Shown piece by piece: positions 23,141 to 51,252 of a stretch of DNA of 64,000 nucleotides. Position 1 is the stretch's first letter; the number at the start of each line of letters is the position of its first letter. The position numbers and the translations under genes are program-made. Origin of the DNA: Cycas panzhihuaensis (lineage: Eukaryota > Plantae > Cycadophyta). The DNA is taken from positions 177,079,741 through 177,143,740 of the forward strand of contig CM041465.1 of assembly GCA_023213395.1 (NCBI GenBank). The letters run 5' to 3'. The notes beneath the pieces were generated by a model. It was not told the origin of the DNA and did not search any database. It saw only the letters and a program-made list of their open reading frames with translations.

Positions 23141-25798
23141 AAGTAGTTTAAGATGAAACAAATACTAATGATCAACCCTTGATGACTAATTTTAACCTGG
23201 ACGACACAATTCTTGACACTATGACATCGATGGCCCTAGAGATGGAACAAGAAGAGATGGATGACTCAAAAAATGCTTGTTAACAAGCTCTGTAGTATTG
23301 TTCACAACAACCTCTTGATCACTTTTGATATGCTTAGAAGATAGCAATAGTCTTATGCCTCTTGAGGCACTAACAATACTAATGAGTTCTAGCCCATCTT
23401 TTTAAAGTGGGTATTTTTTGGCTTACTTAATAATTTTACAATTTGTAATAGTAGCATTATGATGGGAGGCTTAGAACCCACATTTCACTCCCTTATCTCT
23501 TATTATTCTTTATTGTATTTTAATCACAACAAGAAACTTAAACCTTGCACAGATAACTCATTTTCTTAATTCTTGCATAGATTGACTTTGGCCACCACAT
23601 GTCACACCCTTTTATGGTTGTCATTACTACCCTTATTTCTTGTACTTATTGCTAGGATTCTATTGACTCCTAGCTATTGGCAAGATTCCTTTACCTTTTC
23701 TTAATTATTATGTAAGGTTCTCGACTTCCTCAAAGTTGCCTATGTAAGTTTCATTCTGAATAAAAACAAAATCATATCCACTCATGAATTCATGAAGAGC
23801 AAAATCTATTTGAAATATCCCTTTTGTATAGTTGTGAAGCAATTAATAAAAATTTCTAGTTTTGTAATGTTATCATAGCATTTTACCTTTTACTTTAAAG
23901 TTTTTGCTTGGTTCATCTACACTATAATACTTTTTACCTAAGTTAATCTTCCAAAACTCTATTTCACTACATGCTTGTATTCTTTACTACTTTTAACTTA
24001 CATATGGTTAAAAATATAAATCAACCCAATTATTTTTGGATAGGAGATGTTGAGGTGTAAGGAGGAATTATTGAAGGGGAAATCTTGCCATAGATGATTA
24101 ATAATCCTCTAGATCTAAGCAATGATTATCATGAACATTAAATAAGGCTTGGTATATATGTCCAAGTTTTTTTGGAGATAGTTTAATGACTAGGGAAACA
24201 TACTTAGAACAATTTTTTTTTATGTGTAAAAAATTCATCACGTAGGCGGTGTTGGGGTTAATGTTCATCACCCTACTTCCATATTTCATACATGTGAGTG
24301 CACACATATTAAGGTAAGTTAGGTAAGGTTAATTTGATTTGAGTTAAGCTGTTGAGTTATGTAATATTTTATTGTTGTTTGAATTCTAGGGGTTGAGGAG
24401 TTTCCCTCCTCCCCTAAAATATATATTTAGAGGGGTGTCCAACCCTAGTGTCTTTAAACACTGCCTATATTAGAAATTTACTATGTACTCACTCAAAGAT
24501 GGATTGAATACAAAGGCTTATATGTTTATGCTATAATGGAATAATTTTTTATACATGATCTACTCTGTCTCCATGAGGAGTTTCCCTCTTCTCCCAAACT
24601 ATATATTTGGAGGGGTGTCCAACCCTGGTGTCTTTAGACACTACCTATTTTGGAAATTTGCTATGTACTCACTCAAAGATGGATTGAATACAAAGGTTTA
24701 TGTGTTTATATTACAATGGAATGATTTTTGATACATGCTCTGCTATGTCTCCATCATTTTACATTCCTTCATTTGGTATTAGAGTATAGATTCTATGATC
24801 ATTCGCTCAGATTTTGGCTTGTTAAAGTTTTTTTTGAGAAGAAAGAAGATTTATTAGCATCTGAAGTAGATCTACTCACGGCAAGCCAAATATTAGTTCT
24901 ATTCATCTTCTACAAAGATTGATGGCAATTTCTTATATTATTTTTCATTAAAAATATGATTATTTCTTATTTATATTTGTAAAATAACCCATATCTTCAT
25001 ATATCTATGCAGGATCATAGCTATAATCAGTAGATATTCAAGATTTCATCACTTTATGAAGTTTTTATTAATAAGTTATACATATTTTGTTAAATATTTG
25101 ACTATTTTGGTATATCTGGTCCATTTATTCAATATTATTTTTCAAATCTATGCAATAGTTATTACATATTCAACCTAACAAATTTCTTAGAGAAGTTATA
25201 CTGCAAATGGTTAGTTGATAACTATTTATGTGATCTAGCTCTTCATACACTTGGTGAAAGTGTTGCATATGACTATTTGCTGGAATCCTGGCAAGCTGAT
25301 CTGTCTATTGGAGAAATCAGTTCAAAGTTTCGCCTTGTGTGGAAGAAGTTCTCATCCTCTGAAGTCAATCTTCTACACACCTACTACTGCTGCATTACCA
25401 AGTTCTTCGTATATTTACGTTTAGATATAAATTTATATATATTTCTTTGATATATCCTCTCCAATATATTTGAAAGATTTGTTATAGTTTTACATTGATA
25501 TATTGGTATATAGTATTGATTTGGTCGTATATACACCTATATTATTGTGTTTAATCTCTATGTGTGGCTTCGTTTCTTCCATAGTACACCTATTGTGTGT
25601 GAAGAAACCCTGATTTATATTTGGACATCCTGTTTCAAGGTAGCTTGGAGACCATTTTGAGTTTTGGCCTGTGAAATCCATTTGTGAAAAATAGTAAAAT
25701 CTATTACATAAATAGTTCTCAAAACCATTTTGTTAAACAACCCTATTTGAATCATACCATTATTTGTTCATCTGCATACTTGGCTCTTTTTTATTCGC

Positions 25799-25960
25799 TT
25801 AACTCTTCACTTCTGTTGTTGTACACATGAATGACTGCATGCAGATCTTGTAATGAACTGTCATTGCCTTTTTATTAAAGTCAAGTTGACTCCCTTTGGT
25901 GCTCTTGGCCTTCTCTTCTCTCCCAGGCCACCTTGGATTTCTACCCATTCCCACCATTAC
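25799..25960 (-). pseudogene. Captured fragment of an At2g23090-like small zinc-binding protein (4F5/zf-met2 type)
   Basis: GGNG*KSKVA.ER, then (frameshift) EKAKSTKGSQLDFNKKAMTVHYKICMQSFMCTTTEVK. This matches the family pattern GGGNGQKS.MAR...KGSQLE.NKKAMSIQCK.CMQTF.CTTSEVK. Confidence 0.8.
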
Positions 25961-26300
25961 TGGATCAACATATGAATCAGGTAGAACAAAGATGACTCTG
26001 GGTAACCCCACAAGTTTGTTTAAGGCCTCCTCATCAATTTGGCAACAAAATCCATAGTAACGCTTATACAATACATTGTATATTATCTTCTTGGCTGCCT
26101 CCTCAGTTCCCAAAACCTTGGTGAGTTTTTTAATATAACAGTCGATTATTTCCTCCTTTGTAATTTTACCCTCATTGGGAGGGTCCATCACGATGAGCTA
26201 ATACTCATAGTCATAGCTTGGGAAGAGTGCCATGGTCTTCACAAGGGGGCTATCAATTTAGTTTGGCAAGTCATTCATCAATGGAGAATACCCTGAGTCG
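25961..26300 (-). pseudogene. MORF: Captured intronless MORF/RIP/DAG (organellar RNA editing factor) fragment
   Basis: DSGYSPL...ALFPSYDYEY*LIVMDPP...IIDCYIKKLTKVLGTEEAAKKIIYNV...YYGFCCQIDEEALNKLVGLPRVIFVLPDSYVDP corresponds to the MORF box. Confidence 0.92.
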
Positions 26301-48084: not shown

Positions 48085-48682
48085 TTATATAAAAGTATGT
48101 ATATAGATATATATATATATGTATGTATATATATATATATATGTATGTATGTACATATATATATATATATATGTATGTATATATATATATATATGTATGT
48201 ACATATATATATATATGTGTATATATATATATATATATATATATATATATATATATATATATATATATATATATATATATATATATATATATATATATAT
48301 ATATATATATATATATATATATATATGTATGTACAAATATATATATATATATGTGTACATATATATATATATATATGTACATATATATATATATGTATGT
48401 ACATATATATATATATATCTATATATATATGTATATGTATATATATGTACATACATATATATATATATATATATGTACATATATATATATATATGTACAT
48501 ATATATATATATATATATGTACATATATATATATATGTACATATATATATGTACATATATATATATATGTACATATATATATATATATATGTACACATAT
48601 ATATATATATATATGTACATATATATATATATATATGTACATATATATATATATATATATATTTTTTTTTTTTTTTTTTTTT
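48085..48682. repeat. (TA)n microsatellite with GTAC/GTAT interruptions, followed by poly(T)
   Basis: Directly visible, ~600 bp. Confidence 0.98.
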
Positions 48683-51252
48683 GGTTCATATAGTGAGAGC
48701 GCCTTCTTAGACTTAAAGGTTTGATCTTTGTTTTATTTTTGTGCCCCTTTTTTTAATTCTATCTTCCTCGTTTTTGTTGTTTGTGTATTCACAGCAGTGA
48801 CCTATATTTTTTATTCAAATATGTTTTTTATAAAGTTTTTTAAAAAATTAAATTATATTGTATAAAAGTTGAGATTCAAGTTGGTTTTGGGTTTAAGACC
48901 CCCTTTGGTCTTTGCCCCTAATTTCATACTCTTCCATGTGACCTTCGGTATTATTTAAAATGGGCTTTGTTTCATATTCTAAAGTTTTTAAATTAAAAGT
49001 TACTTGTGTTTTTTTTTAACTCAACGAGTGAGTTCACCCTTCTGGCATCAAAAGGGTTTATCTTCTGTGAGGTCTTGGGGTCAATCCCTGCCCAGTCTAC
49101 CCTCAGGATGACAATTCAAGGGGGTTATTTTAAGGATATAATTTTTTTTCTTTTTTTTCTTTTTTTAACATTTTTAAAGCATAAGGTACTTAGATAATTT
49201 CTACAATATCTCTTCATTGGGATATTAGTTTCTAACGAAACCTATCCCGTTGAGTCCAAAATTTTCTAAGGTATAATTTAGACTGGTTATTTTCCATATT
49301 TGGAGCTTATTTTACCTATTTCTAATCAGTTTAAGTCAATTCATTTTTAAAATGCCTTCTTTTAGATTTTTAACATAAAAAAGTACTTGCTGTTATTTTC
49401 ATTATAACTTTTCTGTTTCACATCAGAATTCAGATCCGTTAGTTTTTTTGGAAAGCTGACTCACTCCTCTTCGAACTGACACTATTATTTATAAGTTTTA
49501 AAGTATTCTTGTATACTTTTAAAGCCATCAAAGTTGAAGTACATAACAGTTTTTAATTTGTCATTATTGCATATTTTTATACGTTATTTCTCAAATTTAT
49601 TAACTAAAAAGTATATTGAGTAACTCTTTACACTATATTTGATCATTTTACATTGTTCTGTAAAGTTTTTACTATTTTTTTATAATCTTTTGAGCCCAAG
49701 CTCTCGTTAAATCTCAAAAAGATGACTGCATCTTTTGTACATTAAAATCTTGACTTGTAGGAATCCATTCTCAAAACGGTTAGTTCCGTTGAACAGATAT
49801 TTCATAGATTTTCAAATTGGTATAATTTCACCTTAATTTAACATTGTTTAGTACAGCTTTAAAGTTCCTCAACTTGAGAATTCAAGATATCCCAACATGC
49901 TTGGTCTCTAACCTTTTTTAAAGAGTTCTTTCTTTTATTTCTTACCGATCACTCATAATACATGTTTGAGACTTGCATTTGATTTTTTATATAGCTTCTT
50001 TTAAGTTGATTTGTAGCATAAATTAATCATATACATCTAAAGCAAGTGACAAGTATATGATCAATTTCTTTTTCTGCAACTTAAAACGGGTACAATTCTT
50101 TTTTTTTGGAAGTTTCTTCTTTACTTTTATCTTTCTAAAGTGAAAATATATATTTTTTTTTTTTAGATTTTCAGCATTATATATCTTCATCAAGATAAAA
50201 AGATTTCTTATATTAAAAAAAAAAAAAATTATTTTTTGCTCAAGTTTGTGTTTGTTCATTTGTAAAATCAGTAGCTTAAGAATTCGTTACTTTTTTTATC
50301 ATCAAAAGGTCTTATTTCAGATCTGCATAGTCAAAAGGAAAATTAATTACTTTCTTTCATCTGTGTTGAAAAGTTCATTTACTTATTGCACTTATAAAAG
50401 TTGCATCTAGTTGGTAATATGTTTTACTTTCTTATGGCATCTTTCACTTTTAAGGGCATTGTAATTACTTGCATATTTCTTTCAAACATTTATTATTTAT
50501 TTCATCTTACTTAGATGTTATTATTTTTCATTCAAGTTATTTTTTTATTTGCATAAAAGGAATCTTTCAAAACCTTAAGCAAGACCACACTACTAATTAA
50601 TTTATTTTTTACATTAAAAATGATAATTACGAATTGAACCACCATTTTTTTCCAGCCTTGCAAGGGGAATAGTTAGGACCCCTGAAGCTACCACCCCACA
50701 CACGTTAATCGACCTACTTATATTGGATGAGGACAGTCATTAGCTATCAGGTGTATTCGGTGGCAAGCTAAAGTGTAGAACCTATTCATTTTTATGGTGT
50801 TTGGAGACCAAGGCTAGACTTGGAAAGGGTGAGTGACTTAGTCCAAGAACCTTTACCACTAGATCTGTCGCTAGGCATAAGTCAGGTGTAGATGGACCAA
50901 CAACTTAGGGGGGTGTAAAAACCTTCTTAACAGCCCACGTACTGAGGTATATAAAGCCTAGTACTTACATACTGGTATATTGGGTCCTTGTTTTACCATA
51001 TGTGGGCAGGCACCATTAGACAGAATAGCAACCAAAGGTTGCCTCAGGAGAAACTTAAACTTAGAGCCTAGTAGCCTTAATAAGTCCTAGTTCACTTATT
51101 CAAACTTTGGGAAAAACCTTGGGTTATACTTGCAAGCGAATTTTTACACTTAAAACTTTTTTTAAATTTTAAATTTAAATACTTTTTTGATATTCAAATT
51201 CAAATTTTAAAAATTTATTTGTTACATTTGATCAATAAAACCTTAGTTCAAG

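What the first reader, a model, noticed from the sequence alone, without database searches (positions are those of the whole stretch)
25200..50330. Candidate fixed-site mRNA-capture cassette shared by two LTR elements with different LTRs
Seen in sequence: elements A (24250-29376) and B (45509-55819) have unrelated LTRs but share a leader scaffold. The left arm is 25210-25557 ~ 45872-46307, and homology stops at ATTATTGTGTTTAATCT in both. The right arm is ~26640-28120 ~ 48060-50330 and begins with a T-rich tract plus (TA)n. Between the arms each element holds completely different cargo (~1.1 kb and ~1.75 kb). Every identifiable piece is a 90-340 bp intronless host-gene fragment, and all are antisense to the element. 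Established: LTR elements can acquire host mRNA by RT template switching, which typically yields sense-oriented retrocopies. Inference: this is a modular slot that serially accumulates exonic fragments, perhaps as an antisense transcription unit running from the (TA)n side. It resembles an integron or spacer array and could yield chimeric transcripts or siRNAs against host genes.
Basis: partly seen in the sequence, partly recalled or inferred. Interest (0 to 1): 0.93.

Follow-up and report, generated by a model that had tools for sequence, protein, structure and literature searches.

The report
Copia leaders carrying antisense host-gene mosaics
Two old plant copia-type retrotransposons with different LTRs share a recently exchanged leader, and at the same point in it each carries a different patchwork of spliced host-mRNA pieces lying backwards. 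This is an unusual variant of known retrotransposon gene capture, probably a reverse-transcription hot spot and not a purpose-built cassette slot.

Summary
A (24250-29376) is a pol-less copia-type element. B (45509-55819) is a decayed Ty1/copia element. Their LTR bodies do not align (57% identity), but they share a left arm (25209-25557 ~ 45872-46307) and a right arm (26802-28125 ~ 48805-50336). Between the arms the inserts are unrelated. Homology stops at the same nucleotide on the left. On the right a (TA)n tract sits at the same relative position.

Four insert pieces match proteins, all on the minus strand: MORF2-like, At2g23090-like and transportin-1-like (strong) and ankyrin-like (weak). 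A fifth, AP4M-like, rests on memory only.

New points:
- Arm divergence (K2P 0.17-0.23) is about what the two elements' own LTR decay predicts. The leader was therefore nearly identical at insertion and was swapped between families.
- Contigs from four low-coverage DNA runs pile up on the arms and barely touch the insert. The fall-off is graded.
- Insert A also holds an inverted copy of the element's own leader start with a PBS-like motif, so the whole block has minus-strand polarity.

I read this as template and strand switching by reverse transcriptase at a stall-prone leader site. Nothing shows a dedicated, serially loaded slot. First readers flagged the same architecture in many other windows of this genome, and two follow-ups also called it a variant of known capture.

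The parts
24250..24771 (+). Element A 5' LTR (TGTTGGGG...CA), with an internal 180-bp tandem duplication at 24394-24754. The TSD half GGCGG lies at 24245-24249.
24774..24785 (+). A primer-binding site, initiator-Met tRNA type (TGGTATTAGAGT, two C>T changes).
24786..25204 (+). A-specific post-PBS leader segment of about 420 bp. It is high-copy in reads and absent from B. Its 3' end may be a decayed second PBS.
25209..25557 (+). Left arm in A, homologous to B 45872-46307.
25558..25798 (-). Insert A, leftmost piece. On the minus strand it holds an inverted copy of A's own leader start (25703-25730 vs 25205-25234). A PBS-like motif and a B-type leader start precede it (about 25735-25759).
25799..25957 (-). 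At2g23090-like (zf-met2) fragment, starting about 12 nt upstream of its ATG and fused in frame to the MORF piece.
25957..26299 (-). MORF2-like MORF-box fragment, continuous across at least one position where genomic contigs break (26020 and 26202).
   Evidence: (table 8)
26314..26520 (-). Ankyrin-repeat-like fragment (weak match). 26520-26640 is unidentified but lies contiguous with it in another genomic contig.
   Evidence: (record 28)
26641..26685 (.). T-rich tract plus (TA)10 at the right edge of insert A.
26686..28125 (+). Right arm in A. It is BLAST-level from 26802, and its core 27157-27840 is very high-copy in reads.
28313..28590 (+). A gag N-terminal remnant with stops. No pol is present; only the pol C-terminal tail next to the PPT survives.
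29035..29376 (+). Element A 3' LTR. The PPT lies just upstream, and the TSD half GGTGG is at 29377-29381.
45509..45852 (+). Element B 5' LTR. The TSD half TGCCA is at 45504-45508 and the PBS TGGTATCAAAGC at 45855-45866.
45872..46307 (+). Left arm in B, starting 5 nt after the PBS. It includes an extra 72-bp block holding most of a 32-bp tandem repeat (46145-46211).
46308..46480 (-). Insert B, leftmost piece, unidentified. On the minus strand it ends with AATAAA, about 70 nt, then an A8 run abutting the left arm.
46484..46771 (-). Transportin-1-like fragment, matching human TNPO1 residues 319-405.
46763..46846 (-). AP-4 mu N-terminus-like fragment from its ATG, fused in frame to the transportin piece. 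It overlaps that piece in a shared K-G-S/D codon run that may be microhomology. The identification is from memory only.
   Evidence: inference
46847..48060 (.). Rest of insert B, unidentified. It includes 40/80-bp tandem repeats at 47055-47240 and an 82-aa minus-strand ORF with no homologue.
48061..48684 (.). T-rich tract, a 567-bp (TA)n-like microsatellite (48096-48662) and a T22 run.
48685..50336 (+). Right arm in B, BLAST-level from 48805, with about 160 bp of extra sequence at 48946-49145 relative to A.
51253..55472 (+). B gag-pol, decayed: gag 51253-51654, Pol_BBD 52561-52839, integrase-like 53516-53701, RVT_2 53980-54807.
55474..55819 (+). Element B 3' LTR. The TSD half TGGCA is at 55820-55824.

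Best explanation
A and B are two old insertions of copia-lineage LTR retrotransposons from different families. A is non-autonomous and keeps only a gag stub. B is a decayed autonomous element.

Their untranslated leader, between the PBS and gag, is a module that was swapped between families shortly before they inserted. The most likely route is recombination between co-packaged RNAs that use the same initiator-Met PBS.

About 350 nt downstream of the PBS, at the upstream edge of a T-rich/(TA)n tract, each leader holds a different block with minus-strand polarity. The blocks consist of spliced host-mRNA pieces. In A the block also includes an inverted copy of the element's own PBS-proximal leader.

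My inferred mechanism is as follows. DNA synthesis running from the PBS toward gag (plus-strand synthesis) stalls in front of the hairpin-prone (TA)n/oligo-dA template. The nascent end then hops onto RNAs present in the particle: remnants of the element's own genomic RNA and host mRNAs. It copies them toward their 5' ends with several jumps, then returns to the element. This would account for the antisense orientation, the mosaic structure, the absence of introns and the common left boundary.

The arms persist because they probably carry cis signals such as packaging or dimerisation sites. The block between them is dispensable and turns over.

Shown: the anatomy, the host origin and strand of the pieces, the recent sharing of the arms, and that the arms are high-copy while the inserts are private. 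Inferred: the stall, the plus-strand switch mechanism and any cis function of the arms.
For: - Both elements have copia hallmarks.
- Arms and boundaries are as described.
- K2P values: A LTR pair 0.131, B LTR pair 0.176, left arm 0.165, right arm 0.225, A-versus-B LTR 0.64. The post-insertion decay expected between the two elements is about 0.15, so the arms were nearly identical at insertion while the LTRs were unalignable.
- Host pieces match proteins only on the minus strand.
- The MORF piece runs straight across 26020 and 26202. Contigs of 676 and 1025 bp match only that 183-bp block internally, as an exon in a genomic paralogue would (table 8).
- Insert A carries an inverted leader start. 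It is the only hit of insert A elsewhere in the window (E 0.005), no shuffle of 2000 reached its score, and a PBS-like motif sits at B's spacing.
- Contigs at 80% likeness or more from four DNA runs: summed depth is thousands to tens of thousands on the LTRs, gag and right-arm core. It is hundreds to thousands on the left arm and 0-190 on the insert. Distinct contigs in run X1 number 51 at 25378, 24 at 25524, 7 at 25584, 1-5 across 25834-26256 and 113-125 in the right-arm core.
- The insert lies on the PBS side of the T-rich/(TA)n tract in both elements.
- Multi-gene chimeras from template switching by LTR elements are documented (PMC5131818). So is size variation of the copia untranslated leader (PMC2576258).
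Against: - There are only two inserts here, so the shared boundary and the orientation bias are each n=2.
- The inverted leader piece occurs in A only.
- The T-rich tracts of A and B are not significantly alike.
- Family-wide, contig coverage declines gradually toward the insert on both sides, and many contigs diverge inside the right arm at 27294 and 27334. Breakpoints are therefore ragged and not confined to one site.
- Contig depth is only a rough proxy, as the tool itself warns.
- Plus-strand copying of RNA templates is not a documented route of capture; published cases are sense-oriented (PMC7264820, PMC5131818).
- Most of insert B is unidentified.
- Donor genes were not available, so microhomology and mRNA-end claims are unverified.
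Confidence: 0.6

Rival explanations
1. A fixed site in the leader is loaded serially from the (TA)n side with exon fragments, like an integron or spacer array. It works as an antisense transcription unit that yields chimeric transcripts or siRNAs against host genes.
For: - The left boundary is the same in two elements with different LTRs.
- All recognised host pieces are antisense.
- The arms are high-copy and the inserts private.
- Contig coverage in insert A falls from left to right, so the piece nearest (TA)n is the most private.
- First readers report similar slots in many other windows, unchecked.
Against: - No repeated junction or attachment sequence separates the pieces.
- No associated enzyme exists beyond ordinary pol.
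- The left-to-right coverage gradient is confounded, because the leftmost piece contains high-copy leader motifs in inverted form.
- Breakpoints across the family are ragged.
- The pieces are decayed, with stops.
- No RNA run holds the region.
- A single multi-jump event explains a mosaic equally well (PMC5131818).
Confidence: 0.12
2. The leader is simply a tolerant, hypervariable stretch. The region between two constrained cis-acting blocks accepts any insertion or replacement. The common left boundary marks the edge of an essential signal or a breakpoint inherited from a common ancestor. The antisense orientation of two inserts is chance or weak selection, for example against sense poly(A) signals or upstream ATGs.
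For: - The decline of contig coverage toward the centre is graded and nested on both sides.
- Copia untranslated leaders (Tvv1, Noble) are known to vary by large internal indels while keeping conserved ends (PMC2576258).
- With two independent inserts, both being antisense has probability 0.25 by chance.
Against: - The left arms were nearly identical at insertion, yet the inserts share nothing. Replacement must therefore have reused exactly the same nucleotide.
- The inverted element-derived piece in A points to a specific strand-switch process and not to passive tolerance.
- Many first-reader notes claim that antisense predominates elsewhere in this genome, unchecked.
Confidence: 0.13
3. Capture happened after integration, at a fragile site. 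The (TA)n tract forms cruciforms and breaks in the chromosome, and repair fills the gap with stray cDNA fragments. On this view the inserts were added to resident copies and not made during retrotransposition.
For: - (TA)n lies at the insert edge in both elements and has expanded to 567 bp in B.
- The part of insert A next to (TA)n has essentially no other copies in reads.
Against: - Parts of insert A are present in several distinct contigs, so they were propagated.
- Filler DNA would have random orientation and would rarely be a chain of spliced cDNAs.
- The sharp boundary is on the far side from (TA)n.
- The inverted PBS and leader piece fits reverse transcription better.
Confidence: 0.08
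4. A third mobile element is nested in both leaders. The arms are the ends of a Pack-MULE, CACTA or Helitron-type DNA transposon, or of another retroelement in reverse orientation, which carries gene fragments and inserted independently into A and B.
For: Conserved ends around variable gene-fragment content is the classic Pack-type picture. The fragments are sense relative to the minus strand.
Against: - The outer arm ends have no terminal inverted repeats and no visible target duplication.
- In B the left arm starts 5 nt after the PBS, as a native leader would.
- The fragments lack introns.
- The right-arm core is as abundant in reads as A's own LTR and gag.
Confidence: 0.03

Closest known systems
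Maize Bs1 and LTR-mediated retroposition (Elrouby & Bureau; Tan et al. 2016, PMC5131818)
   Same: A non-autonomous LTR element carries partial, intronless pieces of several unlinked host genes joined head to tail. The process is driven by reverse-transcriptase template switching, and the chimera can be propagated further.
   Different: [quoted passage not shown] Here the pieces are antisense and sit in the untranslated leader (B keeps gag-pol). They occupy the same position in two families, and one block includes an inverted copy of the element's own leader.
Hypervariable untranslated leader of grapevine copia families Tvv1 and Noble (Pelsy 2007; Moisy et al. 2008, PMC2576258)
   Same: These are TGTT-type copia elements with an iMet PBS. 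Their leader ends are conserved while the interior varies by large insertions and deletions.
   Different: That paper attributes the size variation to large deletions and insertions. The passages read mention no host-gene content or orientation pattern. The leaders there are a few hundred bp long, not 3-5 kb.
Mosaic or recombinant LTR retrotransposons (BARE-1/BARE-2, Veju; reviewed in PMC13317346)
   Same: Sequence modules move between families through template switching of co-packaged RNAs. This is the likely origin of the shared arms beside unrelated LTRs.
   Different: Here the exchanged module is a leader that carries a variable block of host sequence.
Pack-MULE, Pack-CACTA and Helitron gene-fragment carriers
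   Same: Conserved flanks surround variable gene-fragment cargo, with many distinct cargos per family.
   Different: Those capture genomic DNA with introns and are bounded by TIRs or Helitron ends. Here the pieces are spliced and the carrier is an LTR retrotransposon leader.
Integrons and CRISPR arrays
   Same: Only the picture of a constant site with variable content.
   Different: No attachment or repeat sequence lies between units, no dedicated integrase is present, and no polarity has been demonstrated.

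Membership tests
Ty1/copia LTR retrotransposon (element B) | TG..CA LTRs, a 5-bp target-site duplication, and a PBS and PPT adjacent to the LTRs | tested here: met
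   LTR pair at 84.7% identity; TSD TGCCA/TGGCA; PBS TGGTATCAAAGC two nt after the LTR; purine tract before the 3' LTR.
Ty1/copia LTR retrotransposon (element B) | Gene order gag - protease - integrase - RT (integrase before RT), with a copia-type RT | tested here: met
   Retrotran_gag_2 at 51253, Pol_BBD at 52561, integrase-like ORF at 53516, RVT_2 at 53980 with E 5e-78. All are decayed, with stops.
Non-autonomous gag-only LTR element (TR-GAG-like; element A) | LTRs, TSD, PBS and PPT present; gag or a gag remnant but no pol | tested here: met
   TSD GGCGG/GGTGG and an empty site at 43031-43043; PBS at 24774; gag N-terminal remnant at 28313-28590 recognised by eye, since Pfam gave no gag match for the overlapping ORF; only the last few pol codons survive before the PPT.
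LTR-mediated retroposition / Bs1-type transduction | Captured sequence derives from spliced host mRNA (no introns) | tested here: met
   The MORF box runs continuously over profile positions 7-84. Genomic contigs match only 26020-26202 internally. The transportin piece aligns continuously to TNPO1 residues 319-405. The donor genes themselves were not available.
LTR-mediated retroposition / Bs1-type transduction | Chimeras of several parental genes inside one element | tested here: met
   MORF2-like plus At2g23090-like in one ORF; the transportin piece is preceded by an AP-4-mu-like N-terminus.
LTR-mediated retroposition / Bs1-type transduction | [quoted passage not shown] | tested here: not met
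   All recognised pieces are on the minus strand, and plus-strand ORFs give no significant match.
LTR-mediated retroposition / Bs1-type transduction | Microhomology at the switch points | tested here: inconclusive
   A possible shared K-G-S/D codon run lies at the AP4M/transportin junction (plus a recalled AP4M sequence). No donor sequences were available to test it.
Integron / spacer-array-like site-specific cassette system | A repeated attachment or boundary sequence between cassettes, and a dedicated recombinase | tested here: not met
   No direct or inverted repeat separates the pieces or flanks the inserts. Only ordinary, decayed gag-pol is present.
Integron / spacer-array-like site-specific cassette system | Polarised, one-ended addition order | tested here: inconclusive
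   Contig coverage in insert A falls from left to right. The leftmost piece contains inverted high-copy leader motifs that inflate its coverage.
Pack-MULE / CACTA / Helitron DNA-level capture | TIRs with a TSD, or 5'-TC...CTRR-3' ends with a hairpin; donor introns retained | tested here: not met
   No inverted repeats at the outer arm ends. The arm ends read GGTT... and ...GCATGTTTAAA. The fragments are intronless.

The most novel reading that the evidence does not exclude
This genome may hold a large 'Pack-LTR' population. In that case copia-lineage elements from several families would share an exchangeable leader with a reverse-transcription hot spot next to a (TA)n tract. That hot spot would systematically write host mRNAs, and the element's own leader, into the element in minus-strand polarity. 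The result would be hundreds of different antisense gene mosaics that are then amplified. If these leaders are transcribed, the mosaics would be a standing source of antisense RNA and small RNAs against housekeeping genes. The polarity would also record a capture route, plus-strand synthesis on RNA templates, that has not been described for LTR retrotransposons.
Probability: 0.25. Interest if true: 0.75.

Novelty: new variant of a known kind. Interest (0 to 1): 0.5.

Why it matters
Gene-fragment capture by plant LTR retrotransposons is known. It is described as sense-oriented and sporadic. A 2026 review of plant gene capture (PMC13317346) contains neither the word 'antisense' nor 'orientation'.

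Here two elements with unalignable LTRs carry different antisense mosaics at the same leader position, and one mosaic includes the element's own inverted leader. This points to a reproducible error mode of reverse transcription. If it holds genome-wide, three things follow:
- A natural record of how copia reverse transcription goes wrong.
- A new class of gene-fragment carrier comparable to Pack-MULEs.
- A possible source of antisense RNA against host genes.

If it does not generalise, these are simply two clean examples of retrotransposon gene capture in a variable leader.

Tried and rejected
- The search for homologous proteins on the MORF/At2g23090 chimera and on A's gag-like ORF found nothing. 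The aim was to reach other family copies through encoding contigs, and that route failed.
- The exhaustive HMMER search with the 82-aa minus-strand ORF of insert B found no homologue, so most of insert B stays unidentified.
- Rfam and tRNA scans of 24-56 kb gave only sub-threshold miRNA-like hits on the (TA)n tract, plus one sub-threshold Histone3 stem-loop hit at 29227-29271.
- A conserved CCCC...GGGG hairpin in the right arm, suggested by another first-reader note, was folded on A and B. It gave a weak structure with no compensatory changes.
- Other PBS-like motifs on the minus strand of insert A (26312-26323 and 25643-25654) looked at first like footprints at each junction. The sequence after them matches no leader, and the first lies inside the ankyrin reading frame. 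I treat them as chance.
- The idea that 25558-25798 is the 3' UTR of the At2g23090-like mRNA was dropped, because its contig coverage differs from that of the adjoining coding piece.
- A conserved short ORF in the left arm is open in both elements for about 50 codons. The pattern of changes shows no sign of constraint, and I did not pursue it.
- The third gag-only element (58174-61197) and the gypsy element (13856-20263) were read for similar inserts. Nothing was recognisable.
- No RNA run holds the region, so expression could not be examined.

Full report
**Setting**

The window is AT-rich plant DNA packed with retroelements. A 13.7-kb segment is tandemly duplicated: 13239-31639 matches 31638-45343 at about 87%. 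Element A lies in the first copy only. The second copy keeps the empty site at 43031-43043, and A is flanked by GGCGG/GGTGG. A is therefore a genuine insertion made after the duplication.

**The two elements**

A spans 24250-29376.
- Its LTRs run TGTTGGGG...CA and are 88% identical. The 5' LTR carries a 180-bp internal tandem duplication.
- Its PBS is of the initiator-Met type (TGGTATTAGAGT, 24774-24785).
- It has a purine tract before the 3' LTR.
- It keeps a gag N-terminal remnant with stops at 28313-28590 and only the last pol codons.
- It is a non-autonomous copia-type element.

B spans 45509-55819.
- Its TSD is TGCCA/TGGCA and its PBS is TGGTATCAAAGC.
- It carries decayed gag, Pol_BBD, integrase-like and RVT_2 regions in copia order.
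- Its gag starts 5.4 kb after the PBS, so the leader is very long.

The LTR bodies do not align (57% identity, K2P 0.64). The two elements do share the LTR tips, the PBS type and about 85 nt around the PPT at roughly 65%. They are distant relatives within one copia lineage.

**The shared scaffold**

- Left arm: sensitive BLAST and MAFFT give 25209-25557 ~ 45872-46307, at 82-90% identity. B has a 72-bp extra block holding most of a 32-bp tandem repeat.
- Right arm: 26802-28125 ~ 48805-50336, at 76-81%.
- In B the left arm begins 5 nt after the PBS. In A about 420 bp of other, high-copy leader lies between them.
- Homology ends at ...ATTATTGTGTTTAATCT in both, and alignment beyond that point is no better than shuffles.
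- On the right, a (TA)n tract sits at the same relative place: (TA)10 in A and a 567-bp array in B.
- The 115-140 bp between (TA)n and the BLAST-level arm is weakly similar (z 2.6).
- The T-rich tract on the insert side of (TA)n is not significantly similar (z 1.9). The right boundary is therefore soft.
- The inserts (25558-26640 and 46308-48060) share nothing.

**Age logic**

| Comparison | K2P |
|---|---|
| A LTR pair | 0.131 |
| B LTR pair | 0.176 |
| Left arm, A vs B | 0.165 |
| Right arm, A vs B | 0.225 |

- Two sequences that were identical when A and B inserted should now differ by about (0.131+0.176)/2 = 0.15.
- On this logic the left arms were essentially identical at insertion, and the right arms differed by a few percent.
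- The LTRs and gag were already unalignable at that time.
- The arms are therefore not slowly conserved relics. They are a module that moved between families shortly before these insertions, yet the blocks between them have nothing in common.

**What the inserts contain**

In A, one minus-strand ORF (25799-26191) matches two proteins:
- MORF2 over residues 2-80, E 2.5e-26.
- At2g23090 over residues 93-129, E 9e-10.

The second piece begins about 12 nt upstream of its ATG. Upstream of both on that strand is a weak ankyrin match (E about 1e-3).

In B, 46484-46771 on the minus strand matches transportin-1 residues 319-405 (E 3e-17). It is preceded in frame by a 28-codon stretch that I recognise from memory as the AP-4 mu N-terminus. 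I could not test that with the tools. The transportin alignment starts at K-G-S/D, which would overlap the end of the AP-4 mu stretch, so there may be junction microhomology. This is inference.

Ten plus-strand ORFs from both inserts gave no significant Pfam match; the best was E 0.037, far below that family's cut-off.

About 65% of insert A is identified but only about 23% of insert B. An 82-aa minus-strand ORF in B has no homologue among 1.84 billion proteins.

Evidence that the pieces lack introns:
- The MORF box is continuous over profile positions 7-84.
- In the read data, contigs of 676 and 1025 bp match only 26020-26202 internally, as a genomic exon of a paralogue would. Other contigs and the insert itself run straight through that point (table 8).

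The only place in the whole window that resembles insert A is A's own left-arm start, in inverted orientation.
- 25703-25730 pairs with 25205-25234, with 26 of 28 positions matching and one 2-nt gap.
- blastn gives E 0.005, and no shuffle of 2000 reached the score.
- Just 5' of it on the minus strand lies TGGTAT, then 8 nt, then TAGGGTTGTTT. This is B's PBS start and leader start at B's exact spacing.
- Read on the minus strand, insert A is: ankyrin, MORF, At2g23090-like, then PBS-like plus leader start.
- The whole block, element-derived part included, has minus-strand polarity relative to A.
- Insert B shows no such piece.

**Other copies (reads)**

I laid contigs from four low-coverage DNA runs on element A at 80% likeness or more. 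The tool warns that contig depth is not copy number, so I use it only qualitatively and alongside counts of distinct contigs.

| Region | Summed depth |
|---|---|
| A's LTRs, gag region, right-arm core (27157-27840) | about 10^4-10^5 |
| Left arm | 10^3 |
| First part of the insert | 10^2 |
| MORF/At2g23090 part | 15-120 |
| 26302-26814 | 0-8 |

Distinct contigs in run X1:

| Position | Contigs |
|---|---|
| 25378 | 51 |
| 25524 | 24 |
| 25558 | 17 |
| 25584 | 7 |
| 25834-26256 | 1-5 |
| 27046 | 32 |
| 27360-27440 | 113-125 |

- The arms belong to large families and the inserts are private or nearly so. This removes the refuting outcome 'only these two fixed cargos'.
- The decline is graded on both sides, and many contigs leave A's sequence inside the right arm at 27294 and 27334. 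Family-wide breakpoints are therefore ragged, not one attachment site.
- Some contigs join a PBS directly to the left-arm start, as in B. Others join A's PBS to about 30 nt before gag, apparently lacking the whole module.
- The coverage gradient inside insert A, higher on the left, cannot be read as addition order. The leftmost piece contains inverted copies of high-copy leader motifs.

**Mechanism**

The facts to explain are these:
- (a) the pieces are spliced host mRNA;
- (b) they have minus-strand polarity, as does a piece of the element's own PBS-proximal leader;
- (c) several pieces are chained;
- (d) the block lies in the leader on the PBS side of a T-rich/(TA)n tract;
- (e) the left boundary is identical in two elements whose arms had just diverged.

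The standard model has minus-strand synthesis hopping to a co-packaged mRNA. It gives sense inserts (PMC5131818, PMC7264820) and does not explain (b).

A polymerase travelling from the PBS toward gag meets the (TA)n/oligo-dA template first, exactly where the inserts begin. If it stalls there and its 3' end switches onto RNAs in the particle, it would copy them toward their 5' ends and write antisense sequence into the plus strand. Copying a remnant genomic RNA would produce an inverted leader that stops at the PBS, where RNase H has already removed R-U5. Running off an mRNA 5' end would force the next jump, which fits the At2g23090-like piece ending about 12 nt upstream of its ATG.

An equivalent version has nascent minus-strand DNA copying a dead-end chimeric cDNA. 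I cannot separate the two. All of this is inference from anatomy, and I give the specific mechanism about one chance in three. I am much more confident of the general reading: a reverse-transcriptase switching product in a dispensable part of a recently exchanged leader.

**Rivals**

- *Dedicated cassette system.* It lacks any junction repeat, enzyme or demonstrated polarity.
- *Passive tolerance of a hypervariable leader,* as in grapevine Tvv1 and Noble (PMC2576258). This explains the graded coverage. It does not explain reuse of the same nucleotide or the inverted leader piece.
- *Filler-DNA repair at a broken (TA)n.* This explains the location. It does not explain the polarity, or the fact that parts of the insert were propagated.
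- *A nested DNA transposon.* It is excluded by the lack of TIRs, the PBS-adjacent start in B and the absence of introns.

**Comparison with known systems and novelty**

The closest known cases are maize Bs1 and LTR-mediated retroposition, hypervariable copia leaders, and mosaic elements such as BARE-2. The differences here are the antisense polarity, the common position in two families and the element-derived inverted piece. A 2026 review of plant gene capture contains neither the word 'antisense' nor 'orientation'. I file this as a new variant of a known kind.

**Other findings of this scan**

First readers noted the same architecture in many other windows of this chromosome-scale piece. Two follow-up agents judged comparable loci to be variants or examples of known capture. 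Those are unchecked AI notes and I did not use them as evidence. They do raise the prior that the pattern is genome-wide, which is what would make it interesting.

**Limits**

- There are only two inserts in this window.
- No donor gene sequences were available.
- No RNA data hold the region.
- The reads were available only as contigs.

Noticed in passing
window 13239-31639 and 31638-45343: A 13.7-kb tandem segmental duplication at about 87% identity (K2P 0.136). Element A inserted into the first copy afterwards, and the second copy keeps the empty site at 43031-43043.
   Followed up: partly
window 25703-25759 (minus strand): An inverted copy of A's own leader start lies inside insert A, preceded by a PBS-like motif. 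The insert is therefore not purely host-derived.
   Followed up: yes
window 13856-20263 and its duplicate 32260-38828: A decayed Ty3/gypsy-type element. It has about 390-bp LTRs (13856-14243 and 19853-20263), a PBS TGGTATCAAAGC at 14245, an RT-like ORF at 17196-17435 and an integrase-like ORF at 18796-19011. The RT and integrase calls are by eye, not tested against Pfam.
   Followed up: partly
window 58174-61197: A young gag-only copia-type element. Its 223-bp LTRs are 96% identical, it has an exact iMet PBS at 58396 and a gag-like ORF at 59761-60144 (by eye; Pfam gave no match). It is nested in another copia element whose gag, BBD and pre-integrase lie at 56248-57617. Its 1.35-kb leader is strongly G-skewed and holds nothing recognisable.
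   Followed up: partly
window 31100-31310, 44803-45013, 63167-63363: A repeat of about 198 bp is present three times at about 84% identity. At the first two copies, which are duplicates of one another within the 13.7-kb duplication, a PBS-like motif follows directly. This could be a small LTR or TRIM-like family.
   Followed up: no
window 2093-7300: A LINE-type element with DUF4283 (2093-2587) and RVT_1 (4736-5266) on the plus strand.
   Followed up: no
window 48096-48684: The (TA)n tract of B has grown to 567 bp and is followed by a T22 run. It produces many sub-threshold miRNA-family hits in Rfam, which are artefacts of the repeat.
   Followed up: yes
window 48946-49145 and 50600-51060: Two GC-richer blocks in B's leader are absent from A. 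The first contains a B-box-like motif (GGTCAATCC), suggesting a small SINE or tRNA-related insertion.
   Followed up: no
window 25251-25450 and 45878-46126: The left arm keeps one reading frame open for about 50 codons in both A and B (…ESVAYDYLLESW…). The pattern of changes shows no constraint, and no search was run.
   Followed up: partly
window 25957-26299 versus read contigs (records 9, 17, 26): Several contigs from other accessions carry the same intronless MORF box at 85-91% identity and end at the same left edge (25957). Other MORF-box retrocopies therefore exist in these genomes. A first-reader note places one about 28 kb beyond this window.
   Followed up: no
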